Virus record (IMG/VR): IMGVR_UViG_3300031952_000001
Location: 124,001 to 188,000 of that record
Length of the DNA stretch: 64,000 nt
Strand: one strand, 5' to 3'
Position numbers and translations under genes: made by a program
Shown here: one piece after another, positions 1 to 31,390 of the stretch
Layout: the number at the start of each line of letters is the position of its first letter
Position numbering within the stretch: position 1 is the stretch's first letter
The notes under the pieces: model-generated
The model's database searches: none
Seen by the model: only the letters and a program-made list of their open reading frames with translations
Told to the model about the DNA's origin: nothing

Positions 1-60
1 GAGCCGACGAAGGAACTCGATCCCGGTTTCTTCCTGTTTCTTCTCGGTCATGTTGCCCTC

Positions 61-276
61 CTAGTCGCCCTCGTCGGGGAGCGGAATGCCGCCGATCTCG
101 AAGTAGGACACGGCGAGCACCTTCCCGTTCCCGTTGTCGAACTCGGTGCACATCTTGGGGTTGTAGCCCTCGGGTGCGACGATGATCAGGTTCAGCCCAC
201 CTTCGTCGACTCCGATCACGTCGTCCCCGTCCCACCCGGACAAGTACATTCGAAGCTCTTTCACCGTGCACGCCAT
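61..276 (-). CDS. small acidic hypothetical protein
   Basis: ORF with GAGGAGG RBS, tightly packed in the leftward operon. Confidence 0.75.
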   Translation of the reverse strand: MACTVKELRMYLSGWDGDDVIGVDEGGLNLIIVAPEGYNPKMCTEFDNGNGKVLAVSYFEIGGIPLPDEGD

Positions 277-277
277 C

Positions 278-532
278 TCAGACCTCCTCGGTATCTTCGC
301 CGTTCTCGGTTATCTGGAAGAACTCGGGATCGGACCCCTGCGCGACCAGCTCTTTCGCCATTTTAGAGGCGGTCAGGATCTTTTCCCCTTCGTCGATGAC
401 GACCCCTGAACAGTGGCCCTCGCTCATCTCGTAAGCGATGGTTTCCAGGCTCAGATCGTCTCGAAGCGGCTCCTCACTCAGAAGCTCGATCTTGTAGGTC
501 CGCTTGTAGAACTTGCGTTTGCTCTTCGCCAT
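278..532 (-). CDS. hypothetical protein
   Basis: ORF with AGGAGG RBS, packed operon. Confidence 0.75.
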   Translation of the reverse strand: MAKSKRKFYKRTYKIELLSEEPLRDDLSLETIAYEMSEGHCSGVVIDEGEKILTASKMAKELVAQGSDPEFFQITENGEDTEEV

Positions 533-541
533 GTCGTCCTC

Positions 542-760
542 CTAGTCGTCCTCGTCGTCGAGGGGGGAGAGCTGACCGACGATCTCTGCGATCCAACGCA
601 GACCCCCATTATCCGCGAGATATTCGAATTGCCCCTCGGGGCCGCTGTTGTTGATCGTCGCAGCCTCTTCGTTTTTGAGATCGCGCACGTACTCGTCGAG
701 CGCGCCCTCGGATAGTTTCAGAGCCCGCTGTCGCAGAGCTTCTTTTCTGTCGTTGTTCAT
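542..760 (-). CDS. small acidic hypothetical protein
   Basis: First gene after the minus-strand class 1 promoter; AAGGAG RBS. Confidence 0.75.
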   Translation of the reverse strand: MNNDRKEALRQRALKLSEGALDEYVRDLKNEEAATINNSGPEGQFEYLADNGGLRWIAEIVGQLSPLDDEDD

Positions 761-805
761 CGTCTTCTCCTTGTTGTGAGTCGGGTAGTCATCCCGCCTT
801 GCCCC

Positions 806-866
806 AATGTAACACAGGCAAATCGGCGGTCAAGGGGCTTGACTCTCTTTTCCCGGTGGTTACATT
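806..866. promoter_or_regulatory. Back-to-back divergent class 1 promoters
   Basis: Minus strand TTGACC(833-828)-16-TACATT(811-806); plus strand TTGACT(839-844)-16-TACATT(861-866). They coincide with the coding strand switch. Confidence 0.85.
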
Positions 867-905
867 TCCCGCTAGGCAGGGCAACGACCAAACGAGGAGG
901 ACGAC

Positions 906-1349
906 ATGGCGGTCAACTGGACAGCGAAACCGGTTCTCACGGACGAGATGGACGAGGGTTTCCGTGTGGTAACGGTGGACGGGGTCAAGCTCAAGTGGTC
1001 GGGCACGCTAGACGTCCCGGATCTAGGAGAGCAAATCCACGTCACGTTCAACGGGTTCGGTCGTGGGTTCGTGCGCGGCTACTGCTACATGGACGGGTTC
1101 GCCGCGCTGCTCGTCGAGCCGGAGAAGTTGCCCGATTGGTACGTCAAGCAGTCAAAGACAACGCACTACAAGCCGGAAATGCCCATGAAGATCATCACCG
1201 TCTTCGGAATCGAATTCAAGACCGTAGATGATCCCTTCCGGTGCCGGTACGACGACTGCTCGAAGGGATACCCGGTCGCCACGGACGACGAACACGTAAC
1301 TTGCCCCGCGTGTCGGAAGGATATGGGCCTGCCTCCCTTGACAGCCTGA
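906..1349 (+). CDS. hypothetical early protein with C-terminal Cys4 zinc-ribbon-like motif
   Basis: GAGGAGG RBS; CRYDDC...CPAC; the stop codon lies inside the next promoter repeat. Confidence 0.8.
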   Translation: MAVNWTAKPVLTDEMDEGFRVVTVDGVKLKWSGTLDVPDLGEQIHVTFNGFGRGFVRGYCYMDGFAALLVEPEKLPDWYVKQSKTTHYKPEMPMKIITVFGIEFKTVDDPFRCRYDDCSKGYPVATDDEHVTCPACRKDMGLPPLTA

Positions 1350-1399
1350 AACCGGTGGTTACATTGGGTAGCAGGGACAGCGAACAACGGGAGGGCAAC

Positions 1400-1639
1400 A
1401 TGGCAACACAGGTCATCGTGAAGAAAAAGAAGTTGTCGGACGGTTCCGAGGTGTTCAACGTTGTGCTCGTGTTCCCCCTTGGTGGTCGTGTGACGTGCCA
1501 CATGGACAGCGAGAAGTCGGCGGAAGATCTGGAATTCCAGTTCAACCGGATTTTCGATCCTGAGAAGACCGGGATACCCACCTTCGGGAAGGCGAACGGG
1601 ATCATCGAAATTTGGGTCGACGGCGACGACTTCAAGTAG
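1400..1639 (+). CDS. hypothetical early protein (LSDGSEVFNV motif)
   Basis: ATG after GGGAGG, downstream of the promoter at 1338. Confidence 0.75.
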   Translation: MATQVIVKKKKLSDGSEVFNVVLVFPLGGRVTCHMDSEKSAEDLEFQFNRIFDPEKTGIPTFGKANGIIEIWVDGDDFK

Positions 1640-1709
1640 AAGCCCTTGACAGCCTGAAACCGGTAGTTACATTCCCAGCCAGGGGAAACGAACAACCGAG
1701 GAGGACCGC

Positions 1710-2291
1710 ATGAGCATCGGGGAGAAGGGCACGCTTCCGGCCGAAGTCGTCAACGATATGAAGAAGTCGGCACTCATGGGCGGCATGGTGCCCAAGTCGT
1801 TCGTCGAGTACCACCTGGCGCTCGCCAAGCGGGCGCTTCCGGCCCTGGTGAGCCGGTTCAGGGTCGAGATCGTGACGACGTTCGTCAAGTCGGGCGGGTG
1901 GTTCGACGGCATGAACAACCTGCGCGCGATCCTTCGGAAGTCGGACAACACGCTTCTGGAGATCGTGTGGTACGCATCGGACGGATCGGGCTACTGGATG
2001 AAGGACACCGGGAACGGCCAGGTGATGCTCTTCCCGGAGGACGTAGGCACCCCGCTCAAGTACATGGTTTGCGGACTGGAAGGGGGGATGCTCACGTTCG
2101 ACGACGAATCCGCTTTCGTCATGGAGATGGAGCGGCGAGGGTTCAAAGAGACGTCCCGTAGCGACTCGGCCCCGTGCCACCATCCGAACCTGTGGGATCG
2201 TCCGCAATTCGATACGTTGTGCGGCCCGATGAAGCATGACGATTACATCCGTTATGATACGTGGGAGGAGAACGAGGCGCTTTCGCGCTAG
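1710..2291 (+). CDS. hypothetical early protein
   Basis: GAGGAGG RBS; own promoter at 1646. Confidence 0.8.
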   Translation: MSIGEKGTLPAEVVNDMKKSALMGGMVPKSFVEYHLALAKRALPALVSRFRVEIVTTFVKSGGWFDGMNNLRAILRKSDNTLLEIVWYASDGSGYWMKDTGNGQVMLFPEDVGTPLKYMVCGLEGGMLTFDDESAFVMEMERRGFKETSRSDSAPCHHPNLWDRPQFDTLCGPMKHDDYIRYDTWEENEALSR

Positions 2292-2368
2292 TCCCTTGAC
2301 ACCCCGCAACCGGTGGTTAGATTGGGGGTGTGGGAAAGAGAACGGCCGCAACCGAGGGAAGGTGGACC

Positions 2369-2683
2369 ATGGCGTATCCGGGGATCATAAATGTTTCCAG
2401 TAAGTACGGTGCTCCGATGGGTCGCGGGAACCGAATTCCCACGGAAGAGTACAAAGGTGCCACGTACTACAACGTCGGCCCCGCGTGCAAGCTCCACCTC
2501 CGCCGTCTCCGCTTCGTGGACGGTTGCTATGACACGGGCGGCGCGTATTGGGGAATGCCCGCCAATCTGTATCACGCGGTCAACGCGGATCGGACTGTCG
2601 AGGTGTTCGTTCGGGCGGACAGCCGCGAAGAGGCGAAAACAGCCGTGCGCGAGATTCTCCCCACGGTGGAATTCTTCAAGTAG
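2369..2683 (+). CDS. conserved-looking phage hypothetical protein (YGAPMGR...YDxGGAYWG motifs)
   Basis: Own promoter at 2296; motifs recalled from phage hypothetical proteins. Confidence 0.75.
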   Translation: MAYPGIINVSSKYGAPMGRGNRIPTEEYKGATYYNVGPACKLHLRRLRFVDGCYDTGGAYWGMPANLYHAVNADRTVEVFVRADSREEAKTAVREILPTVEFFK

Positions 2684-2693
2684 GAGAGGGACC

Positions 2694-2831
2694 ATGAAGA
2701 TCACAGTCGAGAAGATCAACGGGTATCTGGTTCTGTCCGCAATCGTCGGCGGGTATCTGGTGCGGCGCAAGTACATGTACTACACGGTCAAAGAGGCGAG
2801 GGCCATGTTCCGCGCCGAGTGCACCGGCTAG
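2694..2831 (+). CDS. 45-aa hypothetical protein
   Basis: MKITVEKINGYL...; AGGAGAGG RBS; TAG abuts the next promoter. Confidence 0.65.
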   Translation: MKITVEKINGYLVLSAIVGGYLVRRKYMYYTVKEARAMFRAECTG

Positions 2832-2902
2832 CACTTGACAGCCCGCAACCGGTGGTTACATTGGGCGGGAGAGGCAACGACCGCAACCGGGGGAGGGACG
2901 CC

Positions 2903-3349
2903 ATGAAAGAGCCCAAGATCACAATGGAGACGCTTCGCACCGCGTTGACGATCATCGAGGAGTGCGGCGGAATTTCGAAGTTTTTGGGCGAAGATGCACC
3001 GTGCCGCCCTTCCCAGTCTTACACGAAACAGCCTACCCGGCTCGCGGTTCTCAACGCCGTCGAGGACACCGTCACGTTCGAAAGGATCGAGCGGGCGCTC
3101 CGCGCGATCTTCACCCGCCAGTGCAACGGCTACGTCCACGAGCGGACGGGGCGCGAGGACACGGAGGGGATGATCCGAGACGAGCGGCGCGAGGCCAAGC
3201 TCCGCGCCAAGGCCGAAGAGCTTGCCAAGCGGATCGGCCTGTCGATCCATTTCAACGGTGACCCACGCGGCGCGGCGATCAAGATCCACACCCCGCGCAC
3301 GGGTGCCTACAACTCTTTCGGAGGTGCCGAAGACGGATGGTGCGTTTAG
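2903..3349 (+). CDS. hypothetical early protein (CNG...GDPRG motif)
   Basis: Own promoter at 2835; GGAGG RBS. Confidence 0.8.
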   Translation: MKEPKITMETLRTALTIIEECGGISKFLGEDAPCRPSQSYTKQPTRLAVLNAVEDTVTFERIERALRAIFTRQCNGYVHERTGREDTEGMIRDERREAKLRAKAEELAKRIGLSIHFNGDPRGAAIKIHTPRTGAYNSFGGAEDGWCV

Positions 3350-3417
3350 CACTTGACAGCCGCTAGCCGGTGGTTACATTGGGGCAAGGGACAGCGAACA
3401 ACCGGGAGGTGTGAGTC

Positions 3418-3699
3418 ATGGCGAACCGTCATCGGGAAGCACTGGAGATCCAAGAGGGCGCGTGCAACGTCCGGGCAATCGCCCGCGCGCTCGTCAAGGC
3501 GGCCGACGAGGCGGGTAACGAGGGCGGCCCGAATCCGCGCGAGGACGCGGCGGTTCGCCTCATAGCGCACCAGATCGCTTTCTTGTGCAACGTCGCGGAG
3601 ATCGACAACGGTTTCCTGGTGTACTCGAAGCTCGAAGACGAGTGCCGCGCGAAGCGTCCGCCGGTCCCCCCGTGCGAGCGCACCGGTTCCGAGGGCTGA
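3418..3699 (+). CDS. hypothetical early protein
   Basis: Own promoter at 3353; GGAGGTG RBS. Confidence 0.75.
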   Translation: MANRHREALEIQEGACNVRAIARALVKAADEAGNEGGPNPREDAAVRLIAHQIAFLCNVAEIDNGFLVYSKLEDECRAKRPPVPPCERTGSEG

Positions 3700-3781
3700 A
3701 AATCGACGCGGCTACCCCTTGACCGCCTGAAACCAGGCGTTACATTGGGGCAAGGCGGAAAGAACAACCGGGAGGCACGAC

Positions 3782-4231
3782 ATGAAGCGCACCGTTGAGA
3801 TCAACGACACCTTGGACGAAACGGTCAAGTCGGCTTGTGATAGCGTCAAAGACGAGGCGCTTTCGTACCTGGATAGCAACGGGGATGAGGACACGGACGA
3901 AGCCCCGGATCTGAACGATCTCGACGACAGGGGCGCGATCCACGAGATCATCGACGGCGCGACTCCGATCTACAACGGGGAGATTCGGGATCTGTGGTAT
4001 CTGTACGCTTCCGACTTCGAGGCGGCGCTCGACAACGCGGGTATGGAGACGACGGCGGACAACCGGCAACAAATCGCGATCTTTTGCTACCTGGAACAAA
4101 CGGTTCTGGGCTGGTACGAGGGCGAGAAGGGCGCGATCTTCGACGAGTGGCGGGAGAAGAACCCGATCCCGGAAGACGAGGACGACGACGAGGAGGAGGA
4201 AGACGAGGAGGAGGACAAGCCCGCCAAGTAG
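3782..4231 (+). CDS. ocr: Ocr (T7 gp0.3)-like acidic DNA-mimic anti-restriction protein
   Basis: About 30% Asp/Glu with an acidic tail. DDRGAIHEIIDGATPIYNGEI aligns by eye with T7 Ocr [21 protein letters not shown], and CYLEQ with RIYEQ. Confidence 0.72.
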   Translation: MKRTVEINDTLDETVKSACDSVKDEALSYLDSNGDEDTDEAPDLNDLDDRGAIHEIIDGATPIYNGEIRDLWYLYASDFEAALDNAGMETTADNRQQIAIFCYLEQTVLGWYEGEKGAIFDEWREKNPIPEDEDDDEEEEDEEEDKPAK

Positions 4232-4313
4232 GAAATCGACCGGCGACCCCTTGACCGTCCCGCCCCGGTGGTTACATTGGGGCAAGGCGAGACGAACAAC
4301 CGGGAGGTGCGGT

Positions 4314-4793
4314 ATGAGGTTCTACACGACTGACGAGATCCGCAAGGTCGCGAAGGGTCACTTTTTCGACCGCGATGCGATGCGGTTCTTCGACTCGCGC
4401 GTGTGCCTCGATGCGTTCGACGGTCCGGGCGGGTGCTACTTCGTGACCTCCGAGCGTATGCGGGGGATCTGCAACTACCCGGCGGGAAAGCGGCTGTACA
4501 CCGTTCGACGGTTCAACCGGAAGACGGGCGCGGTCACGACCCCGCAGTCGTTCCAGGGCTTCGCCAGCCGCACCGGGGCGCTCGCCGCCGCAAAGCGCGC
4601 CAGCGAGGACGCCAGTCCCCGGAGCGCCGCCGCGTGGAAAGCCGCACGCACCCGCGAGGACAACAAACGGCGGGCCGAGGCCGAGGCGTCCCACCAACGT
4701 TGGCTTGCCCATGTCGCGCCGATCCGCGCTCGCGAGATCGAGGAGGACAGGCAACGCAAGATCGAGCGGTACCCGGAGCTTGCGGCCGAGTAG
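4314..4793 (+). CDS. phage hypothetical protein (GHFFxxxAMRFFxSR...YFVTSE motif)
   Basis: Own promoter at 4251; GGAGGTG RBS. Confidence 0.75.
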   Translation: MRFYTTDEIRKVAKGHFFDRDAMRFFDSRVCLDAFDGPGGCYFVTSERMRGICNYPAGKRLYTVRRFNRKTGAVTTPQSFQGFASRTGALAAAKRASEDASPRSAAAWKAARTREDNKRRAEAEASHQRWLAHVAPIRAREIEEDRQRKIERYPELAAE

Positions 4794-4881
4794 GGAAACG
4801 GCACGCCCACCGCTTGACAGCCCGCAACCGGTGGTTACATTGGGCGGGAGAGGCAACGACCGCAACCGGAAGGGGCGCGAC

Positions 4882-5181
4882 ATGGCGATCCGCGTATACG
4901 ACAACGGATCTCTCTACTCCATTTCTTTCGGGGAAGACGAGATCGAGAGGTTCATGGATTCGTGGCCGTGTTCCGGTTTTGATGGGTTGCGGAACGTGTG
5001 GGCACAATTCGAGAAGTCGAACGGCGATCTTGTCGACCTGGAGTGCAACCGGAGACACGGCGCGGGGAGGTTCGACGGCGCGGCTATGGTCGCCCTCGTC
5101 GATGATATGCAACGCGAGGCGATCCGCCGCAAGGGGAAAGCCTTGGGCGTCGAGTCGCACCTCGAAAGGTTCGCAAGCTAG
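4882..5181 (+). CDS. hypothetical early protein
   Basis: Own promoter at 4814. Confidence 0.75.
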   Translation: MAIRVYDNGSLYSISFGEDEIERFMDSWPCSGFDGLRNVWAQFEKSNGDLVDLECNRRHGAGRFDGAAMVALVDDMQREAIRRKGKALGVESHLERFAS

Positions 5182-5250
5182 GCACTTGACAGCCCGGCCC
5201 CGGTGGTTACATTGGGGGATAGGCAAGCGAACAACCGAAAGGGGCGCAAC

Positions 5251-5523
5251 ATGGGAAAGCGGGACGTCGAAATGGTGCCGTTCGGCCGCTTGATGGACCT
5301 GTTGGACCGGCCGGACGCGGATCGTTTGGGGTTCAAACGGGGCAAGGGGATTTTCGACGATTGCCGGGTGGTTTGCTACGCTTCCCGGTCCATGCTCCGC
5401 GAGGTGTGCCGCTTGACGCTCGATCTCGACTTGGACCGACAGGTCGTTGCGCTCGTGAAAGACAAGGTCGCGCCGAACATGGTCGCGATCCCCACGTTCG
5501 AGGTTGAGACGGGCCGGGAGTAG
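5251..5523 (+). CDS. hypothetical early protein
   Basis: Own promoter at 5186. Confidence 0.7.
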   Translation: MGKRDVEMVPFGRLMDLLDRPDADRLGFKRGKGIFDDCRVVCYASRSMLREVCRLTLDLDLDRQVVALVKDKVAPNMVAIPTFEVETGRE

Positions 5524-5573
5524 AATCGAACCGGGCGGGCCGACTACCCACCCCACGACAAGGAGAATTTCAC

Positions 5574-5708
5574 ATGGCGAAGGATCACGCGGCGAAGCGT
5601 CTGGCGGTCGAGCTTGCCATGCTCGACGTGTACACGATTCTCGGAATCGACACGTCCCTGCAACGGGCGAGGGTCACGTTCGCCAAGGTCGAATACGAGG
5701 CGCTCTAA
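5574..5708 (+). CDS. 44-aa hypothetical protein (not in ORF track)
   Basis: AAGGAG RBS; MAKDHAAKRLAVELAMLDVYTILGIDTSLQRARVTFAKVEYEAL*; TAA directly abuts the next ATG. Confidence 0.6.
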   Translation: MAKDHAAKRLAVELAMLDVYTILGIDTSLQRARVTFAKVEYEAL

Positions 5709-5849
5709 ATGAAGACAGGGCGCAATGACCCCTGCCCTTGCGGTAGCGGGCGCAAGCTGAAACGGTGTTGCGAGGCCGCCACGCGCCCCACAGTGGGCGG
5801 AAAGCTCGCGGTGGCCCTCCGGTGGGTCCTCCGGGCGCTCGCCGGTTAG
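5709..5849 (+). CDS. 46-aa SEC-C metal-binding motif mini-protein (not in ORF track)
   Basis: [21 protein letters not shown]... matches the SEC-C consensus [18 protein letters not shown], followed by a short hydrophobic/basic helix. Confidence 0.8.
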
Positions 5850-5967
5850 CGGGGCAACTAGAGCCCTCCGGCGAGATGGGCAGAATCGACCGGCCCACCC
5901 CTTGACCGTCGCTAGCCGGTGGTTAGATTGGGGGTAGGCAAGCAACGCAACCGGGGAGGTGGGGATC

Positions 5968-6606
5968 ATGGCGTTCGACAACGGCAGGATCGCGGTGGAC
6001 GTGAAAGAGCTTCCGGCGGCGCTTCAAAGGGCGCTCGCTTCCGTGGGGTACGGGCGGAAAAGCATCGACGTCATGCCAGCCGAAACGGCGAGCCTGAGCG
6101 GCGCGGGCGGCGACGGATACCAGGCTTTCGCGACCGTCGTCAACCTGGAGACGGGCGAGTACCGGACCGAGTGGGGATCGTGGGGTGGTGCGAACATGTT
6201 TAACCCCCGCAACGCGGTAGACAATGACCGGAAGGATTACCCGATCCCTGAGAACGGGGCCGTGATCACGGGCCACAAAGGTGGCGGGCGTCCGGTGTAC
6301 GCCACGATCCGCGTAAACCCGGCGGCGCTCGCGCCCCTACTCCCGGCCAAGGCCGAGCTTTCCGAGCGTCAGAGGGTCATTCTCGGAACGGTCCGGGGTA
6401 CGAAGGGCGGCGCGTATCGCCTCGAAGCGTTGAAAGAGTATGGTGTCACGACGGAAGAACTCGACACCTTGATCTCGGGCGGTTTCATGAAGCGGAACAA
6501 GGCGGGCGCGATCTCCATGACGACGGCGGGCGAAAATGAGGCCATGACCGGCGGGCGGCGAGACTCCATCGTTTACGCATACCGGCAGGCCACTCGCGGG
6601 TGGTAA
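5968..6606 (+). CDS. hypothetical early protein, possible C-terminal winged helix
   Basis: Own promoter at 5902; C-terminus LSERQRVIL...ELDTLISGGFMKRNKAGAISMTTAG resembles a wHTH. Confidence 0.75.
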   Translation: MAFDNGRIAVDVKELPAALQRALASVGYGRKSIDVMPAETASLSGAGGDGYQAFATVVNLETGEYRTEWGSWGGANMFNPRNAVDNDRKDYPIPENGAVITGHKGGGRPVYATIRVNPAALAPLLPAKAELSERQRVILGTVRGTKGGAYRLEALKEYGVTTEELDTLISGGFMKRNKAGAISMTTAGENEAMTGGRRDSIVYAYRQATRGW

Positions 6607-6689
6607 ATCGACCGCTCGACCCCTTGACCGCCGCTAGCCGGTGGTTAGATTGGGTGGGAGAGGCAACGACCGCAACCGAGGGGGACCGA

Positions 6690-6935
6690 ATGAACGTCAA
6701 CGAGATCGAGCGCGGTATGGTTCAAGTCATCGTCCCGCCGTCGTTCGTCGCGGCCTTGATCGGAGTGTTGCAGGTTTCGATCCGGCGCTCCGGGACCGTT
6801 ACGGTTTGGTACGCAAACGGAACCACGGCCATGGCGCGGAATCTCTTGGGGCGGAAAGGGGCGATCCCGGACAGCGTTTTCGACCTGGATCGGATGGTTA
6901 AAGAGTCGCGGGGAATCGACCGGTCCACCCCTTGA
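6690..6935 (+). CDS. hypothetical early protein
   Basis: Own promoter at 6624; its TGA is part of the next -35 box. Confidence 0.7.
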   Translation: MNVNEIERGMVQVIVPPSFVAALIGVLQVSIRRSGTVTVWYANGTTAMARNLLGRKGAIPDSVFDLDRMVKESRGIDRSTP

Positions 6936-6999
6936 CCGGCCGAAACCGATGGTTATATTGGAAGGGCAGGGGAAAGAGAACGGAAGCGAGATAGAGATA

Positions 7000-7065
7000 C
7001 GGCCCGATATATTCTAGTAGCCTAGATCACGGGTTAGCGAGGTTCGACTCCTCGCCGGGCCGCAA
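7000..7065 (+). ncRNA. tRNA-like small RNA (acceptor stem and T-arm, no canonical D-arm or anticodon arm)
   Basis: CGGCCCG(7000-7006)/CGGGCCG(7056-7062) stem; GCGAGG-TTCGACT-CCTCGC T-arm (7037-7055); 3' CAA. It sits directly behind the promoter at 6932. Confidence 0.6.
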
Positions 7066-7096
7066 GGGGAAAACGAACAACACCGGGAGGTGTGAC

Positions 7097-7405
7097 ATGG
7101 CGAAGCTGATGGAGATCGCGAGGGTCAACGTGGACGGGAAGACGGCCAAGCGGATCAACGTCGCCAAGCAGAACGCCCGCGCCGTCGAGAAGGCCGAGGA
7201 CAGGATCGTGCGGATCTCCAGGTTCGCGCACGAGTGCATCGCGGCGGACAAGCCCGCCGTCGTCCGGGAGTCGTGGATCGTCCGGGCGCTCGTCGATCTC
7301 CTGTCGGGTGCGTCCTACTCGCCCCGCGAGCATGAGATCCTCGCCCGCGCCTTGGCGAACGTCCGCCGCGAGATCGCGGTACAGTCGGCCGGTTGCGCGG
7401 ACTAG
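7097..7405 (+). CDS. hypothetical early protein
   Basis: GAACAAC leader and GGAGGTG RBS. Confidence 0.75.
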   Translation: MAKLMEIARVNVDGKTAKRINVAKQNARAVEKAEDRIVRISRFAHECIAADKPAVVRESWIVRALVDLLSGASYSPREHEILARALANVRREIAVQSAGCAD

Positions 7406-7416
7406 GAAGGCACCCG

Positions 7417-7605
7417 ATGAAAACCCTCATGGACGATCTCTTGTACGCTTGGGGAGAGTTGATCGATCTCAGGCGCAAGGTACGAGATAAAGGCGGGCCG
7501 TGGGGTGCGGCCGATCTGGCGGTACACGAAAGGCTCGTTTCTGAGATCGATACCCTCGTCGGGAGGTTGCCGGAGGGTTGGAAGGCGTGGAAGGAAGAGG
7601 GTTAG
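7417..7605 (+). CDS. hypothetical protein
   Basis: Packed ORF; TAG abuts the AATCGAC box of the next repeat. Confidence 0.65.
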   Translation: MKTLMDDLLYAWGELIDLRRKVRDKGGPWGAADLAVHERLVSEIDTLVGRLPEGWKAWKEEG

Positions 7606-7690
7606 AGAATCGACCACCCCACCCCTTGACCGCCCGCCACGGGTGGTTATGTTGTGAGGGTAGGGAACGAACAACGGAAAGGGGCGGAAC

Positions 7691-8026
7691 ATGGCGCGGG
7701 GATATCTGGTAACGTCGCGGAACGGCAGAAAAGCGGTGTTACTAGACGTTCGCACCCTGTCAACCGTCCCGGTGTCCATGTCGACGTGGGCGATCATTTC
7801 GGGATCGTCGCCGCCGGATCAAGACTACCGGATCGTGATCCATCGGTGGGAGATTCGCGACGGCAAAGCGATCTTGACGGTGGGTAACGTCGTCCTCGAA
7901 GACGTTGAGGCCGATCTGGAAGTAGACGAGGCCGATCTAAGCCCGCCCAAGGGTAAGGGGTGGCGATGGGATTTCGGGGAGTGGGTTAGGGACACCCGCA
8001 AGGGGCGCGAGGCGTGCCAGCCCTGA
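7691..8026 (+). CDS. hypothetical early protein
   Basis: Own promoter at 7626. Confidence 0.7.
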   Translation: MARGYLVTSRNGRKAVLLDVRTLSTVPVSMSTWAIISGSSPPDQDYRIVIHRWEIRDGKAILTVGNVVLEDVEADLEVDEADLSPPKGKGWRWDFGEWVRDTRKGREACQP

Positions 8027-8109
8027 GAATCGACCGGCGACCACTTGCACGCCCAAAACCGATGGTTATATTGGTAGGGTAGCAGAAAAACCCACGGGAG
8101 GTGCGAGAC

Positions 8110-8520
8110 ATGGCGACCAAGATCAACCCCCAGATCAAGATCATCGCGGACACCTACAACCGGAAGATCGACAAGGCCAAGAGCAATCTCGCGCTCGCGG
8201 TGCGGCAGTTGTCCACGGTAGACAAGACCGTCCGGCGCGTCGAGGTGGACCGGGCGACGGGGCAGATCAACGAAGTCGTGCGGCACCTGGCGCACCCGTT
8301 CGAGATCGCCCGCGCCGTCGCGGTCGTGGACCGGTGCAAGGCCGAGGTCGCGGCCCTGGTAGATGCGAGGGACCTGGCGATCATGGGAGTCGAGATCGAC
8401 GCCGAGGCCAAGGGTCGCCGCGAGGCCGCCCGCCGCGCTCGCGACTCGTACACCCTGGCGTGCATCGAGGACGGCACGGACCGCACCGTCGACATGGACG
8501 GGGAGGTGTGCGCCGCGTAA
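8110..8520 (+). CDS. hypothetical early protein
   Basis: Own promoter at 8045; GGAGGTG RBS. Confidence 0.7.
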   Translation: MATKINPQIKIIADTYNRKIDKAKSNLALAVRQLSTVDKTVRRVEVDRATGQINEVVRHLAHPFEIARAVAVVDRCKAEVAALVDARDLAIMGVEIDAEAKGRREAARRARDSYTLACIEDGTDRTVDMDGEVCAA

Positions 8521-8576
8521 CTACACCGGACTACACCGGGGAGATCGGGGACCGCAAACAAGGGGAAGGTGAACCC

Positions 8577-8861
8577 ATGTCACTGGAAATCAGGAACGAG
8601 GAACACTACAACGCAGTCGTGGCCTTCGCCGAGGCGGAGGGGATCGGGGATAAGCTCCGCGAGGTGTTGGACTACCTCGACGGGTACGCCAATCACGACG
8701 CCCGCGAGAAGGGCGAGCCGGACGCCACGATCTGTAAGCTGTTCCCGGATTTCGCTCCGCAGTCGTTCAGTTTCGTCATGGAGAAGGGCGGCCGGTTCTG
8801 GTTCAACGGTGGGGCAATCTTCTACGGTGCCAGCGATCCGAGGTGGGGGGTGCACACGTAG
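8577..8861 (+). CDS. DUF4120-like protein
   Basis: LFPDFAPQSFSF...WFNGGAIFYG...WGVHT matches the recalled DUF4120 pattern DFAPxSFxF..NGGxIxHG..WxxHT. Confidence 0.65.
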   Translation: MSLEIRNEEHYNAVVAFAEAEGIGDKLREVLDYLDGYANHDAREKGEPDATICKLFPDFAPQSFSFVMEKGGRFWFNGGAIFYGASDPRWGVHT

Positions 8862-9318
8862 GCCAACCCTCGCCCAACCTTCGACACCTACAGTCAACCA
8901 CTCCAGACTACCCCAACCTTCGACCCACTCAAAACAAAGATGAGGGGGGAGATCTCCAGGTTGCCAGCTAGGGGCAGGGGGGAAAGGTAGACTAGCTCTT
9001 TCCCTGGTAGTCAAGGGTCAACCTCTCCCCTGGTAGGTGTTCCCCTGGTAGGTAGCAAAGGCCGCTAGTTGTCCCACCAGGGGTTTCCGCAGGTCCATGG
9101 CAACCCTCGCCGAGCCCTCGCCCAAGGTCAACCGGAAACCTGAGATCCCGACAACCCTAGACAAGCCCCCTGGTAGGCTCGCCAGTCGCCTCGAACGAAA
9201 CCCTACCCCTACCAGGGGGGAAGGACAAGGGACCGGCCCACGGCGGCGCTCCGCGAGCCTCGACAAGCCTATAGGAGACGGGCCGGGATCTTGACTACTC
9301 GCCGAGGCTGGAGATATA

Positions 9319-9385
9319 TATGGTCACGGCGTGACCATACATTCCCGTGACCATACATGTATGGTCATGACCATATGTGACCATA
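9319..9385. repeat. TGACCATA direct/inverted repeat cluster (6 copies)
   Basis: Forward copies at 9332, 9348, 9368, 9378; reverse copies (TATGGTCA) at 9319 and 9360. Confidence 0.85.
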
Positions 9386-10703
9386 CCGGGCCGGTGAATC
9401 TCGGCACGAGGGGGAGATCGGGGTGATAGGTAAGAGATCGGGATTATGGGGAAATCTCGGATCGTTTGGATCGGTTAGGGGTAGACGTAGGGGGAGGGGG
9501 GAGATGTAGGCATATAGGGGGGAGGTGGATTGGAGCAGCCCCACGATCACATCATCACCCGACAGAGATCGCGCAATCTTTGCGTACCTCGCAAAAAGGT
9601 CACAACACATGCCACATCCAACCCTCGATCCCGCGATCTCCATCGATCCCGCCTAGAGATCGCGCAACCATCCGTCAACCCTCGATGATCTCCCCCAATC
9701 TCCATCAAGAGTCGGCCGAGATCGGCCAATCTTGGCCTGGTACGGGCCGAGCTTGGCCCTTGTCGGGCCGCCCGGACCTTCGCCGATCTCCGCCCACCTT
9801 GAACCACAATCGATGGACCTGGACACGAGCCCGATGGATCGGCCGGCGCTCGCACATGTTGGTAGAGATTAGCTAATGATTACGGTATGTTAAAGGTGTA
9901 GGGCCAAGGTTGCGCCGAGCATGGGCGGGGATCGGCCGATGGATCGGGGAGGCCGGGGGAGATCGGGGAGGATTGCGGGGGGATTGGGCAATCTCTGCCC
10001 CTGATTGCGCGATCCCCATCGGATCGCGTGCTAGATCGCGCGATCTCGAAAGATCGGGGGCTGCCCCCAATATACACCGACCCTCCCCAACATTCCCAAA
10101 ATCCCATCGGGTCCCATCCTATACCTTACAAATCCTTGAAATCATTGAATAATATTTCCCGAAAATTCCGGGTCCCCTTTTTCCCCTACAACCCTGCCCA
10201 AAAAGGAGCCTGGCTTCTAGATCCGGCCAAGGTTTGGGTCCCCTCCTATGGTACAGGTAGGGTTGCCCGAGCCCGGCCGAACCCTGGGCCGCCAACCCTA
10301 GGCCAACCCTGCTGGAGGAACCCTGGACACCTCAGACGGAACCCCTTGCTGCCGGCGGCCCCTCAAGGTCGACCCCAACCTCCAACCCTTCCAACCTTCC
10401 CAACCCTTCCCAAGACTACCCCAACCCCAGGGCAAGGCAGGGTTGGACCTTCAGCAACCCTTCAGCTGAACCTTGAACCAAAGGTACCCGGGGTTGGGCC
10501 CCCAGGGGAAAATAGGGATCGCGATCTCGGTCTGGAGGGATCGGTGGAGGGTTGCCGAGTCGAACCCTACGTTGAGGTAACCTTACAAGGGTTGGAGGTA
10601 AGTATAGGTTCGAGGGTTGAAGGGAGGGTTGCCGAGGGTTGAGGAACCCGGGGACCTCAGGCCCCCTCAAGGTTGGAACCTTGGGATCGTGCGATCTACA
10701 GGG

Positions 10704-10735
10704 TTGACCTTGGGAAGGTGGCTGTGTTATATATT
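10704..10735 (+). promoter_or_regulatory. sigma70-type promoter (class 2)
   Basis: TTGACC-18-TATATA(TT), upstream of the gene at 10756. Confidence 0.6.
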
Positions 10736-10755
10736 CAGCCACGGGAGGTGTTACC

Positions 10756-11181
10756 TTGAGACGCACTATGAAGCAAAAGCTGATCGGCTGCAAAGATGGA
10801 GCTGCAAAAGAGATCGAGAGGCTTCTGGCCCGCATGGAGGAGCTGAGGGCTTTGATAATCATGGTTGACGGAATCCTGGAGGGGGAGAAACCCCTGGAAG
10901 ACGACCCTCGTGCGCACCTCAGGGCGTCCAGGGGATCTGGGAGGATCAACGACCTGCTTCTGGCGGCGTGCGTTGATTGGAAGACGATCAACGAACTCAT
11001 GGAGGTGGTCCCTGAGCTGCAAGGGAGACACCCCGCGGGGATCAGCACGCGGTGCCGCCTTCTGTGGCTGGGTGGGCTCCTGGAGCGCCGATCCGCCGTT
11101 CCTTGTCCTCCCGGGAGGTACCCTCGCAAGGGGAGGGCGGGGTACACGTACAAAACGTTGAAGACCGCTCTCAGAGAATGA
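10756..11181 (+). CDS. coiled-coil + winged-helix DNA-binding protein (paralog 1 of 3)
   Basis: ACVDWKTINEL...ISTRCRLLWLGGLLERR is shared with the ORFs at 12936 and 19729; TTG start after GGAGGTG. Confidence 0.7.
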   Translation: MRRTMKQKLIGCKDGAAKEIERLLARMEELRALIIMVDGILEGEKPLEDDPRAHLRASRGSGRINDLLLAACVDWKTINELMEVVPELQGRHPAGISTRCRLLWLGGLLERRSAVPCPPGRYPRKGRAGYTYKTLKTALRE

Positions 11182-11204
11182 GGGCGTGTAGGAGGAGCAA
11201 GAGG

Positions 11205-11591
11205 ATGCAGGAGTTCGACCCATCGAAGATCGAAGATGTTCTCGATCCCGTTACGGGCGAGGTGGTGGCCCGATGTCGAGTTCTACGGTGTACCATTTGC
11301 GGCAGGAGGGAGTTTTACCCTCGTCGCATCCGGTGGGAGGGCTCTGTTGCTCACTGCCCGAACCCACGTTGTAGTGGTGCTGGAATAAACATTGATCTGC
11401 GTCCGAAGGCTACCCTGTACCACCGTGAACGTCCTCCGAAGCAGATCAAGAGGGTCGAGGTGAGGTGCACCAACTGCCTCAAGGTCTGGGGAGCCAACGC
11501 GAAAAAAGGAATCCCACTCCGATGTGATTTCTGTGGGGTCATGGGTGTAGTTGAGAAGGTCTCTCAAGAGCCCTCTGAGCAGGGCGCATAG
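11205..11591 (+). CDS. double zinc-ribbon protein
   Basis: CTICG, CPNPRC, CTNC, CDFCG. Confidence 0.65.
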   Translation: MQEFDPSKIEDVLDPVTGEVVARCRVLRCTICGRREFYPRRIRWEGSVAHCPNPRCSGAGINIDLRPKATLYHRERPPKQIKRVEVRCTNCLKVWGANAKKGIPLRCDFCGVMGVVEKVSQEPSEQGA

Positions 11592-12463
11592 AAAGAGGAG
11601 CAAGAGGATGCCGAGCAAGAAGAGGAAGCTGATCAAGACGACCGGGGAGCCCCTGGAGCAGCCGAAGGTTCTCTCCCAAGAGGAGATCAATGCGTTGAAC
11701 CTGGAGACCCTGGACTACCTGGTGGCACGCCTGCACGAGTACCGGAGACGGGAGGACATGTCGAAGATCTCCGTGTCCGTGTCGGAGACCCGGCCGATCA
11801 AGCCGGTGTACCCTCAGGAGGGTGGAGACCACATCGGGTACGTCCAGAAGGGGCCGCGGGTCCTGACCATCGTGATCCAGGACTTCGAACACGACGGGCA
11901 CATCCGCGCCGCGGGGGAGGCCTGGTGAGCGTCATGAACGACACGAACCCTGTGCTGACCATCATCGCGCCCCTGTTCGGAAACCCCTTCGCAACGAGCC
12001 TGGCGCTCGCTCGGGCATGGTTCGAGCGAGCCTACCCGACCGACACGCCCCAGCAGGTGTACGTCACCGTCCGGAGGATCCCATGAAGAAGGTGAACTAC
12101 AGCGATCCTACCCCGTGGACCTGGGAGGAGATCGCGAAGCTGAACGGGCCGGCGTACTCGGAGTTCCTGGAGGTGTATGGGGACCGGGGCAAGGTCGCGA
12201 TGGTGATCGCCGAGACCATCGAGGACGGCAGGTACGCGATCTACGACAGGGACTACTGCAACTGGGGAGGATGCCACTTCTGCCCTCTGTGGGCCCCGGA
12301 AGGGAGTGAGTGGTTCTCCCGGGAAGAGCATCAGAAGTATGCCTTCGCATACTGCTTGGAGTTGTCCTTGATCGTCTACACCCGCATGGTCAAGAAGCTC
12401 GGTCGACTGCCCGCATGAGGCCGGGGTAGGGTTCAAGGGTAGACAGACAGGCGACTCGTAGGC

Positions 12464-12856
12464 CTATTCGAGATCTTTGAGGCTTACCCGGGCGGAGAAC
12501 TTCTCAAGGGTCTTTCCGTCGTCTCCGCACAGGTAGGCCTCCTCGTCGAAGTAGACGAAGCGGACCTGGCTGTCCTTCAGGGTCACGATCAGCTGCGCCA
12601 GGTTGATTTTGACTACCCCGCCCTCCTCAGCTTTCAGGTGTGTCCTCATGCTGAAGATCTTCACATGCTCGCTGGCAGGAGGGATACCGTCTGGGGCTGT
12701 TCGACCAAGGAGTTTCAAATCGAAGTTGCCGTTGAAGATCGCGACAGGGGTGAACCTGACTTCAGCCACATCTCCGAGGATGTAAGATCCTTGATCCGGT
12801 ACAAAGTCCGGATCTCCGAGCCTCTCTGTGGGGGTGTACATGACTTTTAGAAACAT
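12464..12856 (-). CDS. phage hypothetical protein
   Basis: Clean ORF; C-terminal AYLCGDDGKTLE motif. Confidence 0.7.
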   Translation of the reverse strand: MFLKVMYTPTERLGDPDFVPDQGSYILGDVAEVRFTPVAIFNGNFDLKLLGRTAPDGIPPASEHVKIFSMRTHLKAEEGGVVKINLAQLIVTLKDSQVRFVYFDEEAYLCGDDGKTLEKFSARVSLKDLE

Positions 12857-31362: not shown

Positions 31363-31390
31363 TTGACACACCAAAATTGATGGTTACATT
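31363..31390 (+). promoter_or_regulatory. solo class 1 (early-type) promoter
   Basis: CCCCTTGACA-16-(TGGT)TACATT plus TAGGCAGGG...GAACAAGGAGG leader, as in the 0.8-8 kb array. Confidence 0.82.

What the first reader, a model, noticed from the sequence alone, without database searches (positions are those of the whole stretch)
806..8861. One-promoter-per-gene cassette array of about 20 small early genes
Seen: 16 copies of a ~60-80-bp unit punctuate 8 kb. The unit is an optional AATCGAC box, CTTGAC -35, 16-bp spacer, TA(C/G/T)ATT -10, A/C-rich leader and RBS. Each unit heads only 1-3 short ORFs. The upstream stop codon nearly always abuts or overlaps the next unit (e.g. GGC-TAG-CACTTGAC, TGG-TAA-ATCGAC, CCT-TGA-CC), and I saw no intrinsic terminators between units. 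Knowledge: strong repeated host-RNAP promoters mark the host-takeover regions of SPO1- and T5-like phages. Inference: this is a plug-in anti-defence/host-takeover array in which the promoter repeat also serves as the homology tract for cassette gain, loss and shuffling, i.e. integron-like behaviour without an integrase. The Ocr-like gene suggests the uncharacterised neighbours are good anti-defence candidates.
Basis: partly seen in the sequence, partly recalled or inferred. Interest (0 to 1): 0.8.

Follow-up and report, generated by a model that had tools for sequence, protein, structure and literature searches.

The report
Repeated-promoter early-gene cassettes, jumbo phage
An uncultured 212-kb sediment phage carries two back-to-back rows of about 38 tiny, mostly unknown genes, nearly each behind its own copy of one strong bacterial-type promoter, and sister phages gain, lose and swap these genes exactly at the promoter copies, as already described for T4-like phages.

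Summary
A CTTGAC-N16-TA(C/G/T)ATT unit occurs 16 times in window 806-8072 against 0.07 expected, and 15 plus-strand copies head 20 ORFs of 44-212 aa. The window is part of a 211,982-bp IMG/VR phage contig, and nine more copies run leftwards from position 833. That gives a two-armed array of 24 units and about 38 genes over 14.8 kb.

The invariant bases sit where sigma-70-type polymerase contacts a promoter, so host-polymerase promoters are the likeliest reading. No transcript data exist.

Eight related contigs differ by presence, absence or replacement of single cassettes, and a more distant relative has the order partly scrambled. The switch between upstream-linked and downstream-linked homology falls inside the ~34-bp promoter core. 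In 32 of 72 orthologous positions the unit resembles a unit of another gene more.

This is the PeSL principle of T4-type phages (PMC2839356), here in an unrelated high-GC jumbo phage and without the stem-loop terminator. The "anti-defence" label rests on one gene, a moderately supported Ocr-like protein. I rate it a new variant of a known kind, of moderate interest.

The parts
1..833 (-). Proximal end of the LEFT arm: promoter unit 833-806 (-35 TTGACC, 16-nt spacer, -10 TACATT) heading ORFs 760-542 (72 aa), 532-278 (84 aa) and 276-61 (71 aa). The arm continues beyond the window start with 8 more units.
839..1349 (+). Cassette 1: promoter 839-866, back-to-back with the left-arm promoter (the two -35 boxes are 5 bp apart). 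ORF 906-1349 (147 aa, C-terminal CxxC...CxxC zinc-ribbon-like). Present in R2, absent from R1.
1338..1639 (+). Cassette 2: promoter 1338-1365, whose -35 lies inside the end of ORF 906-1349. ORF 1400-1639 (79 aa). R1 and R2 hold an 81-aa plus a 45-aa ORF in this slot behind the same leader.
1646..2291 (+). Cassette 3: promoter 1646-1673; ORF 1710-2291 (193 aa, ORFan). Present in all close relatives.
2296..2831 (+). Cassette 4: promoter 2296-2323; ORFs 2369-2683 (104 aa) and 2694-2831 (45 aa). In R1 and R2 the 45-aa homologue has its own promoter. R1-R3 carry an extra 154-aa cassette just upstream.
2835..3349 (+). Cassette 5: promoter 2835-2862; ORF 2903-3349 (148 aa). Its unit shares a 57-nt exact run with the unit at 4814.
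3353..3699 (+). Cassette 6: promoter 3353-3380; ORF 3418-3699 (93 aa). Absent from R1.
3700..4231 (+). Cassette 7: AATCGAC box 3701-3707, promoter 3719-3746; ORF 3782-4231 (149 aa, pI 4.1, 47 Asp+Glu), an Ocr-like probable DNA mimic. Absent from R1.
4233..4793 (+). Cassette 8: box 4234-4240, promoter 4251-4278; ORF 4314-4793 (159 aa, DUF7447 E=3.6e-17, basic tail).
4814..5181 (+). Cassette 9: promoter 4814-4841; ORF 4882-5181 (99 aa). Present in R1, absent from R2 and R3.
5186..5849 (+). Cassette 10: promoter 5186-5213; ORFs 5251-5523 (90 aa), 5574-5708 (44 aa) and 5709-5849 (46 aa, SEC-C zinc motif). 5524-5573 looks like a promoterless remnant of another leader type.
5883..6606 (+). Cassette 11: box 5884-5890, promoter 5902-5929; ORF 5968-6606 (212 aa): beta-rich N-domain plus MarR-like winged helix, from a widespread unannotated phage family.
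6605..6935 (+). Cassette 12: box 6606-6612, promoter 6624-6651; ORF 6690-6935 (81 aa). Its stop codon is the TGA inside the next -35.
6913..7605 (+). Cassette 13: box 6914-6920, promoter 6932-6959, an unusual 137-nt leader holding a tRNA-like element (7000-7062), then ORFs 7097-7405 (102 aa) and 7417-7605 (62 aa).
7607..8026 (+). Cassette 14: box 7608-7614, promoter 7626-7653 (-10 TATGTT); ORF 7691-8026 (111 aa). Present in R6, absent from R1.
8027..8861 (+). Cassette 15, the last of the right arm: box 8028-8034, promoter 8045-8072 (-35 TTGCAC); ORFs 8110-8520 (136 aa) and 8577-8861 (94 aa). In R6 the second ORF has its own promoter.

Best explanation
This is the hyper-variable accessory-gene region of an uncultured ~212-kb tailed jumbo phage from sediment. 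I infer that it is the early region.

Architecture. Two arms diverge from a point near window position 835. There are 24 near-identical expression units over 14.8 kb: 9 fire leftwards and 15 rightwards. Each unit consists of:
- an optional AATCGAC box;
- a -35 CTTGAC(A/C);
- a 16-bp spacer ending in (G/A)TGGT;
- a -10 TA(C)ATT;
- a GGG discriminator;
- a standard ~30-nt A/C-rich 5' leader with a GGAGG ribosome-binding site.
Each unit drives 1-3 small ORFs.

Expression (inferred). Host sigma-70/sigma-A-type RNA polymerase holoenzyme recognises the units as soon as the DNA enters the cell. Every small gene is therefore expressed at once and independently of its neighbours. Because there are no terminators, read-through adds to the expression of distal genes.

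Turnover (shown by comparison). The units are the joints of a modular system.
- Sister genomes differ by whole cassettes.
- The sequence upstream of the -35 travels with the upstream gene, and the leader travels with the downstream gene.
- The variable parts of the units are exchanged between positions.

Mechanism of turnover (inferred). The most economical mechanism is general or phage-encoded homologous recombination, or recombination with relaxed homology requirements, between short and imperfect repeats. Exact shared runs are mostly 15-23 nt. Such recombination produces in-register deletions, insertions, replacements and conversions that always leave a working promoter-leader-gene unit.

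Gene products. They are mostly unknown. One is an Ocr-like acidic DNA-mimic candidate and one is a winged-helix DNA binder. A host-takeover or counter-defence role for the set rests on analogy only.
For: Promoter identity:
- 17 motif matches against 0.07 expected, and 16 sigma-70-like sites against 2.6 expected.
- The invariant alignment columns are CTTG(AC) and G-T-T-A..T-T. These correspond to the -35 box, G-14, T-12, A-11 and T-7, the bases that sigma contacts by established knowledge of sigma-70 promoters.
- Spacer and leader lengths are uniform.

Concentration:
- Only 1 of the 17 matches lies outside the array in 64 kb.
- The strict pattern hits the phage's own contig only in this region.

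Two arms: PWM scan.

Cassette polymorphism:
- Gene-family orders in OWN and R1-R8.
- The same local orders recur in independent assemblies, for example 1710|154-aa|2369 in R1, R2 and R3, and 3418|3782|4314 in OWN and R3.

Joints inside the units:
- 126 of 203 homology-block ends fall inside units against 35 expected.
- In pairs with the same downstream but a different upstream gene (n=26), identity stays at background (0.2-0.3) up to -12 from the -35 and reaches ortholog level in the leader.
- In pairs with the same upstream but a different downstream gene (n=19), identity is high up to the core and at background in the leader.
- Clean recombinants: R1 lacks 3418 and 3782, and its unit matches the 3353 unit through TACATTggg and the 4314-type leader after it. 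In R1 the 81-aa gene carries the 839 promoter and leader as far as the ribosome-binding site.

Ectopic exchange:
- In 32 of 72 orthologous unit pairs, a unit heading a different gene is the closer match.
- The variable part of the unit is 0.79 identical between orthologs, against 0.92 for the adjacent coding sequence.

Other points:
- Order scrambling in the more distant R7/R8.
- More breaks than in a control region: 10 blocks in 15 kb against 4 blocks in 22 kb of structural genes.
- Ocr-like protein.
- Precedent for the mechanism: PMC2839356 and PMC4122927, where crossovers were mapped between the -10 and the ATG.
Against: - No transcript evidence exists. No RNA run was listed and the host is unknown, so both 'early' and 'host polymerase' are inferences.
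- The enrichment of breakpoints is confounded. The units fill almost all the intergenic space, and selection for intact genes alone would push surviving junctions there. The genome pairs are also not independent.
- Exact homology between units is short: median 11 nt, and only 11 of 276 pairs share 20 nt or more. That is at or below what classical RecA-type recombination needs.
- All relatives are short-read metagenome assemblies, and some singleton variants could be chimeras.
- Only 2 of about 30 scanned products have any functional hint.
- The structural control region is itself partly mosaic.
Confidence: 0.7

Rival explanations
1. The repeats are conserved only because each gene needs a strong promoter. 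Indels arise by illegitimate recombination at random places, and selection keeps only those that leave intact genes. Junctions therefore merely appear to sit in the units, and the repeat has no role as a recombination substrate.
For: The units occupy nearly all the intergenic space, so the enrichment is confounded. Exact shared runs are short.
Against: - Junctions are in register and scar-free, with the switch point inside the conserved 34-bp core rather than spread over the 100-nt intergenic stretch.
- Variable spacer and leader types are reassorted between positions without any change of gene content (32 of 72 pairs). Random indels plus selection do not predict that.
- Unit-to-unit recombination is shown experimentally in the T4-type precedent (PMC2839356).
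Confidence: 0.15
2. Much of the apparent cassette polymorphism is an artefact: short-read metagenome assemblers jump between repeat copies of co-occurring strains and build chimeric contigs.
For: Logan contigs of the source-like sample break at or near units, and minor co-occurring variants exist there (depth about 4 against about 25). R3, R4 and R5 are fragments from one metagenome.
Against: - Only 2 of 276 unit pairs share an exact run of 31 nt or more, so a mis-join at k of 33 or more is possible at very few places.
- Variant cassettes contain unique genes that must sit somewhere.
- The same local orders are recovered from different samples and projects (R1, R2, R3; R7 and R8).
- An independent contig matches window 800-2863 with no differences.
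Confidence: 0.07
3. The units are not host early promoters. They would be sites for a phage-encoded sigma factor, polymerase or regulator (middle-class promoters or operators). The conserved spacer end and the AATCGAC box would be the real recognition elements.
For: - Conservation extends beyond the two hexamers: CCGGTGGT in the right-arm spacers, and the AATCGAC box in 7 of 15 units.
- The array encodes a winged-helix protein, and the window encodes a triple-HTH protein with Sigma70_r4-like units.
- Many jumbo phages bring their own polymerases (general knowledge).
Against: - The invariant columns are exactly the sigma-70 contact positions.
- The CCGG part of the spacer is not conserved in the left arm, so it looks like shared ancestry rather than a required site.
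- No RNA polymerase or full sigma factor was found among the 30 larger window proteins scanned, though most are unannotatable.
Confidence: 0.15

Closest known systems
PeSL (promoter-early stem-loop) regulatory cassettes of T4-type phages (Arbiol et al. 2010, PMC2839356; Comeau et al. 2014, PMC4122927)
   Same: - Repeated intergenic sigma-70-like promoters sit in a hyper-plastic region full of small ORFans, about one per gene.
- Close relatives differ by insertion, deletion and replacement of promoter+ORF modules.
- Crossovers map inside the repeat, between the -35/-10 and the ATG.
   Different: - There is no stem-loop or terminator component.
- A GC-context AATCGAC box replaces the AT-rich upstream tract.
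- The phage is not T4-type: the nearest terminase is 36% identical, in Virus Rctr197k.
- The genome has 58-64% GC.
- The array is a single two-armed block rather than several regions.
- Mini-circles have not been examined.
Host-takeover module of Bacillus phage SPO1 (26 small early genes in a 12.4-kb terminal region, with promoters and ribosome-binding sites typical of highly expressed genes; PMC6873191)
   Same: A dense block of small genes in many short operons, each with a strong host-type promoter and a strong ribosome-binding site. Size and gene number are similar.
   Different: - The products share no homology with those of SPO1.
- A position in a terminal redundancy is not known here.
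- Early timing and host shut-off are demonstrated for SPO1 and only inferred here.
- For SPO1 I know of no report that the promoters act as recombination joints (own knowledge).
Integrons
   Same: An array of small single-gene cassettes of variable content with a repeated sequence at every cassette boundary.
   Different: - No integrase was found.
- There are no attC-type imperfect hairpins.
- Every cassette has its own promoter instead of one common Pc.
- The order is largely colinear among close relatives.
- The array sits in a lytic-type phage genome.
Shared early regulatory sequences used to find anti-defence genes in archaeal viruses (Bhoobalan-Chitty et al. 2024, PMC11065993)
   Same: A conserved strong promoter motif marks a set of small immediate-early genes among which anti-defence genes are enriched.
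   Different: Those are archaeal promoters and viruses. No role of the motif in recombination is claimed in the abstract I read. Function was validated there and not here.
T7 Ocr (gp0.3) DNA-mimic anti-restriction protein, as comparison for ORF 3782-4231 only
   Same: A small, very acidic helical protein (pI 4.1). T7 Ocr is the only PDB sequence hit of the family profile and the top Foldseek hit (probability 0.98, TM 0.57). It matches the PHROG 'ocr-like anti-restriction' family at E=1.7e-4.
   Different: It scores below Pfam's threshold, has about 19% identity to Ocr, and is 30 residues longer with an extra poly-acidic tail. Its activity is untested.

Membership tests
PeSL cassettes (T4-type phages) | Repeated intergenic strong sigma-70-like promoter (-35, -10) in front of small ORFs | tested here: met
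   Met by sequence consensus only; activity was not measured.
PeSL cassettes (T4-type phages) | Adjacent stable stem-loop acting as terminator or attenuator | tested here: not met
   RNAalifold on 16 aligned units gives -0.42 kcal/mol and no covarying pair. Terminator-like sites are at chance level.
PeSL cassettes (T4-type phages) | AT-rich tract upstream of the -35 | tested here: inconclusive
   Seven of 15 units carry (G/A)AATCGAC 11 nt upstream of the -35. This is only relatively A/T-rich for a 62% GC genome. The other units have none.
PeSL cassettes (T4-type phages) | Lies in a hyper-plastic region of non-conserved ORFans | tested here: met
   Only 2 of 20 right-arm ORFs reach a Pfam threshold, and none of 10 left-arm ORFs. 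The array shows 10 homology blocks in 15 kb against 4 in 22 kb of the structural control.
PeSL cassettes (T4-type phages) | Indels and replacements between close relatives with the crossover inside the motif | tested here: met
PeSL cassettes (T4-type phages) | Excised promoter+ORF mini-circles | not testable with these tools
   The 'goes back' joints are explained by mosaic units of co-occurring relatives and are not evidence of circles.
PeSL cassettes (T4-type phages) | Carried by a T4-type (Straboviridae-like) phage | tested here: not met
   The best GenBank terminase match is Virus Rctr197k at 36%, followed by PaBG-like and other jumbo phages at 23-28%.
Integron | IntI-type tyrosine recombinase next to the array | tested here: not met
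   No recombinase domain was found in the 30 array proteins scanned.
Integron | attC recombination sites (imperfect inverted repeats) at cassette ends | tested here: not met
   No conserved hairpin in the units.
Integron | Promoterless cassettes read from one common promoter | tested here: not met
   Fifteen promoters serve 20 ORFs.
SPO1-type host-takeover module | Cluster of small genes in many short operons with strong host-type promoters and ribosome-binding sites | tested here: met
SPO1-type host-takeover module | Expressed first after infection, with products that shut off host functions | not testable with these tools
   No RNA run was listed, and there is no cultured host.
Ocr / gp0.3 DNA mimics (ORF 3782-4231) | Sequence membership in the ocr family | tested here: inconclusive
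   PHROG ocr-like E=1.7e-4. The family profile hits only T7 Ocr in the PDB, at E about 0.1 over nearly the full length. A fresh Pfam scan found no ocr hit for any of the 19 aligned members. Two homologues carry a precomputed weak PF08684 hit.
Ocr / gp0.3 DNA mimics (ORF 3782-4231) | Ocr-like helical fold and strongly negative surface | tested here: met
   AF2 model pLDDT 86.5. The Foldseek top hit is Ocr 9ex7_C, probability 0.98 and TM 0.57. pI 4.1 with 47 acidic residues out of 149.
Ocr / gp0.3 DNA mimics (ORF 3782-4231) | Blocks type I restriction-modification or BREX | not testable with these tools
   Needs an assay.

The most novel reading that the evidence does not exclude
The unit may be more than a promoter that happens to recombine. 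It could be a lineage-wide 'plug-and-play' standard: a fixed promoter, leader and box that a dedicated phage factor recognises. Candidates are the array-encoded winged-helix protein 5968-6606 or an unidentified recombinase. That factor would both switch the array off after takeover and catalyse or target cassette exchange, including between co-infecting phage lineages. This would be a promoter-based functional analogue of an integron in lytic jumbo phages.
Probability: 0.1. Interest if true: 0.8.

Novelty: new variant of a known kind. Interest (0 to 1): 0.5.

Why it matters
- It shows that promoter-mediated modular shuffling is not a peculiarity of T4-type coliphages and vibriophages. Until now it was documented only there, as PeSLs.
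- The same solution appears in an unrelated, high-GC, uncultured jumbo phage lineage from sediments, without the terminator half of the PeSL. A bare promoter plus a standard leader is therefore enough.
- In practice the unit is a sequence tag that pulls out the variable accessory gene pool of this phage group from metagenomes. One 31-nt pattern retrieved seven related contigs. That pool of about 90 protein families so far is where counter-defence and host-takeover functions are expected.
- At least one candidate is already there, the Ocr-like protein, and it is itself a variable cassette.
- The array also gives a natural, compact set of about 24 graded variants of one strong promoter and leader for a high-GC host.

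Tried and rejected
- Megablast of 800-9000 against GenBank phages found no match.
- ARAGORN and Rfam at gathering thresholds found nothing in the window.
- My first IMG/VR pattern scan had one N too many and found nothing. It should be ignored. The pattern was corrected after checking it on the window.
- The protein atlas gave no usable lead for 1710-2291 or 5968-6606.
- No RNA run was listed, so start sites could not be mapped.
- I considered that the 'goes back' joints might be excised circles or tandem duplications. I rejected this. Each is explained by a relative's unit whose variable part resembles another unit of the window, for example the R1/R3-type leader in front of gene 2903.
- The promoter pattern in 185,579 species' genomes gave six single hits in unrelated phyla. 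My own estimate of chance is about 4 for 19 fixed bases in 596 Gb. There is therefore no array in cellular genomes and no clue to the host.
- I asked whether the architecture is ancestral to the wider clade. The nearest GenBank record, Virus Rctr197k, has no PWM hit and almost no TTGAC-N-TANNNT sites. Low-GC phages that carry Ocr-family homologues (L044, L046) have no such array either.
- I considered a MITE-like or transposon origin of the units and rejected it. They have no terminal inverted repeats, all point along their arm's direction of transcription, and all sit in register with a start codon.

Full report
WHAT IS THERE

The window is identical to bases ~124001-188000 of IMGVR_UViG_3300031952_000001 (= Ga0315294_10000012), a 211,982-bp phage contig from a sediment metagenome. 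Its large terminase is only 36% identical to the nearest GenBank record, the 197-kb 'Virus Rctr197k'. It is 23-28% identical to the terminases of PaBG-like and other jumbo phages. The phage is therefore an uncultured jumbo phage unrelated to T4, SPO1 or T5. GC content is 55-64% throughout, and the array does not differ from the rest in composition.

CHECK OF THE OBSERVATION

The repeat is real and far beyond chance.
- The motif TTGMM-N14-KGTTAYRTT has 17 matches in 64 kb against 0.07 expected. Sixteen lie in 806-8072.
- A generic sigma-70 scan gives 16 sites against 2.6 +/- 1.8 expected.
- Fifteen copies are on the + strand. The sixteenth (833-806) is on the - strand, back-to-back with the first, with the two -35 boxes 5 bp apart.

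The units head 20 ATG-started ORFs of 44-212 aa, each with a GGAGG-type ribosome-binding site.
- Spacers are all 16 bp.
- The distance from -10 to ATG is 34-45 nt in 14 of 15 units.
- The upstream stop codon lies -12 to +20 nt from the next -35 in 13 of 14 junctions.
- Seven units carry AATCGAC in a fixed register.
- Terminator-like sites are at chance level (10 found, 9.9 expected), and the aligned units contain no conserved hairpin.

THE ARRAY IS LARGER THAN REPORTED

A weight matrix built from the 15 units finds eight more - strand units upstream of the window, in locus L002 at window coordinates -220 to -5933. The structure is therefore two-armed: 9 units fire leftwards and 15 rightwards. 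Together that is 24 units and about 38 small genes over 14.8 kb (the left-arm gene calls are my own and crude). Elsewhere in the window the unit occurs once, at 31363. The stricter pattern hits the phage's own contig only in this region.

ARE THE UNITS PROMOTERS?

The invariant alignment columns are C-T-T-G(-A-C) and G-T-T-A..T-T. By established knowledge of sigma-70-family promoters, these correspond to the -35 element, G-14 of an extended -10, T-12, A-11 and T-7. They are followed by a GGG discriminator in most units. This is what a near-optimal housekeeping-sigma promoter looks like, so recognition by host polymerase is the most likely reading.

It remains an inference. No RNA run was listed, the host is unknown, and I found no polymerase or complete sigma factor among the 30 larger window proteins scanned. 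Most of those proteins are unannotatable anyway. 'Early' follows only from analogy with SPO1, T4 and T5.

The 31-nt promoter pattern retrieved related contigs from IMG/VR and JGI metagenomes.
- R1: a 205-kb sister genome.
- R2: 18.3 kb, covering both arms.
- R3-R6: fragments.
- R7 and R8: more distant relatives from another project, reached through the Ocr-like protein. Their proteins are 34-88% identical to those of the window, and their right-arm -10 is TAAATT.
- All have the same two-armed architecture.

Shared segments of OWN and R1 are 81-97% identical, yet the arrays differ cassette by cassette. ORFs are named here by their window start.
- 906 is absent from R1.
- The slot of 1400 holds an 81-aa plus a 45-aa ORF in R1 and R2.
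- A 154-aa cassette lies between 1710 and 2369 in R1-R3 but not in the window.
- The extra cassettes n28 and n29 (R2), n30 (R2) and n32 (R3) have no counterpart in the window.
- 3418 and the Ocr-like 3782 are absent from R1.
- 4882 is present in OWN and R1 but not in R2 or R3.
- 5251 is absent from R1, and 7691 is absent from R1.
- Promoters themselves come and go. The homologues of 2694 (in R1 and R2) and of 8577 (in R6) have their own unit.
- Among close relatives the order is colinear. In R7 ten shared families appear in the order 1400, 2369, 4314, 2903, 5709, 3782, 8577, 5574, 8110, 7097, so 8 of 45 pairs are inverted (my count).

Content polymorphism is therefore abundant, and order polymorphism appears at greater distance.

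WHERE ARE THE JOINTS?

(i) Of 203 homology-block ends inside arrays, 126 fall in units (-25..+75) against 35 expected from coverage. This number is inflated by non-independent genome pairs. It is also confounded with 'intergenic', because the units fill nearly all the space between genes.

(ii) Identity profiles are more telling.
- In unit pairs with the same downstream but a different upstream gene (n=26), identity is at background (0.2-0.3) up to -12 from the -35. It rises in the core and reaches ortholog level in the leader.
- In pairs with the same upstream but a different downstream gene (n=19), identity is high up to the core and at background in the leader and coding sequence.
- The switch point thus lies within the ~34-bp promoter core.

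(iii) Individual recombinants are clean.
- R1's unit in front of the 4314 homologue equals the 3353 unit through ...GGTGGT-TACATT-ggg. It equals the R2/R3 4314-type leader thereafter, which deletes 3418 and 3782 exactly.
- In R1 the 81-aa gene carries the 839 promoter and leader up to the ribosome-binding site.
- The window's 1400 has the same leader, up to the ATG, as the 81-aa gene of R2.

(iv) Units are exchanged between positions without any change of gene content.
- In 32 of 72 orthologous pairs the variable part (spacer plus the first 24 nt of the leader) is closer to a unit heading another gene.
- Its mean identity between orthologs is 0.79, against 0.92 for the adjacent coding start.
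- Example: the unit of 2903 is 57% like its R1 ortholog but 100% like the unit of 4882 in the same genome.

(v) A 22-kb structural region compared between the same two genomes has 4 homology blocks, against 10 in the 15-kb array. It is a modest control, because that region is itself partly mosaic.

CAVEATS

- Exact runs shared by units are short: median 11 nt, 11 of 276 pairs at 20 nt or more, maximum 57 nt. The recombination must therefore tolerate short, imperfect homology. This is plausible for phage recombination systems by general knowledge, but it is not shown here.
- The same figure argues against assembly chimeras, because only two unit pairs share an exact run of 31 nt or more.
- Independent assemblies agree on many local orders, and an independent contig matches window 800-2863 without a difference.
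- Singleton variants remain unverified.
- Logan contigs of the source-like sample also show minor co-occurring variants, at depth about 4 against about 25.

GENE CONTENT

Only two right-arm proteins reach a Pfam threshold: DUF7447 (4314-4793) and a SEC-C zinc motif (5709-5849). None of ten left-arm proteins does.

ORF 3782-4231 is moderately well supported as Ocr-like.
- PHROG 'ocr-like anti-restriction', E=1.7e-4.
- A profile of 19 homologues hits only T7 Ocr in the PDB, at E about 0.1 over nearly the full length.
- The AlphaFold model is confident (pLDDT 86.5). Its top Foldseek hit is Ocr bound to BrxX, with probability 0.98 and TM 0.57.
- pI 4.1 with 47 acidic residues.
- It fails Pfam's threshold.

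ORF 5968-6606 models confidently (pLDDT 88.7) as a beta-rich domain plus a MarR/RovA-like winged helix. It belongs to a family of more than 150 unannotated proteins found in other phage-like contigs.

Everything else is dark. The 'host-takeover / anti-defence' label is thus an analogy with one supporting gene. The logic that a shared early promoter marks such genes has experimental precedent in archaeal viruses (PMC11065993).

COMPARISON WITH WHAT IS KNOWN

The behaviour matches PeSL-mediated modular shuffling in T4-type phages. There, repeated strong sigma-70-like promoters in hyper-plastic ORFan regions serve as points of homologous exchange, with crossovers mapped between the -10 and the ATG (PMC2839356, PMC4122927).

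Membership fails on two defining features that I tested.
- There is no stem-loop terminator.
- The phage is not T4-type.

The layout also resembles the SPO1 host-takeover module, which has 26 small early genes in 12.4 kb with strong promoters and ribosome-binding sites (PMC6873191). The integron analogy fails on integrase, attC sites and promoterless cassettes.

The architecture is not shared by the nearest GenBank relative or by any of 185,579 species' genomes. It is a trait of this phage group.

VERDICT

The promoter function, early timing and anti-defence role are inferred. This is a new variant of a known kind: PeSL-like, terminator-less, in an unrelated high-GC jumbo phage. Interest is moderate.

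Noticed in passing
window 7000-7062 (+), within insert 6983-7095: A tRNA-like element without a D arm sits inside the unusually long 137-nt leader of promoter 6932. It has a 7-bp acceptor-like stem, a T arm with a TTCGACT loop, and an anticodon-like arm. ARAGORN calls nothing, and the best Rfam match is tRNA-Sec at 22 bits (threshold 47). The 112-nt insert is absent at the same promoter in R1 and R5, and its first part is present in R2. It could be a decayed phage tRNA gene or an RNase P/Z processing signal.
   Followed up: partly
window 8862-~10770: A 1.9-kb gene-free stretch directly follows the right arm and is packed with short repeats. GTGACCATAC occurs 3 times (9331-9386), TCCCCTGGTAGGT 2-3 times (9026-9178), and there are many GAGATCG/CGATCTC words and CAACCCT words. 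The window stretch 8063-9977, which includes its first 1.1 kb, is about 87% conserved in R1. It may be a replication origin, packaging site or regulatory region.
   Followed up: partly
window 31363-31390, heading ORF 31421-32851: One isolated copy of the same promoter type (TTGACA-16-TACATT with ...GATGGT before the -10) lies 23 kb from the array. It heads a 476-aa ORF with no Pfam or PHROG match.
   Followed up: no
window 5968-6606: The largest cassette protein is a two-domain protein: a beta-rich N-terminal domain plus a MarR-like winged helix. It belongs to a family of more than 150 metagenomic proteins with no Pfam model, found in other phage-like contigs. It is a candidate for a new family description and a possible regulator.
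   Followed up: partly
window 278-532 (-) and L002 4720-4965 (-): The left arm holds two paralogous small genes (84 aa and 81 aa, one family) in different cassettes. The two left-arm units at window -1244 and -1554 share a 38-nt exact run. This suggests a recent cassette duplication.
   Followed up: no
window 34853-35395 (+): A 180-aa protein made of three helix-turn-helix units (Sigma70_r4, HTH_28/HTH_7 and Mor-like hits). It is the only transcription-factor-like protein I found outside the array.
   Followed up: no
L047 (Ga0505005_0000451) 400-12500; L048: A more distant relative from a different sequencing project has the same two-armed array (10 + 10 units). Its right-arm -10 is TAAATT instead of TACATT, and the cassette order is partly scrambled. 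The promoter consensus thus co-varies across a whole arm within a genome.
   Followed up: partly
L002 56-316 (upstream of the window): At the far end of the left arm the DNA is a short-period tandem repeat that reads as ...LIVIGTLIVIGT... in one frame. It is probably non-coding repeat DNA that marks the edge of the array.
   Followed up: no
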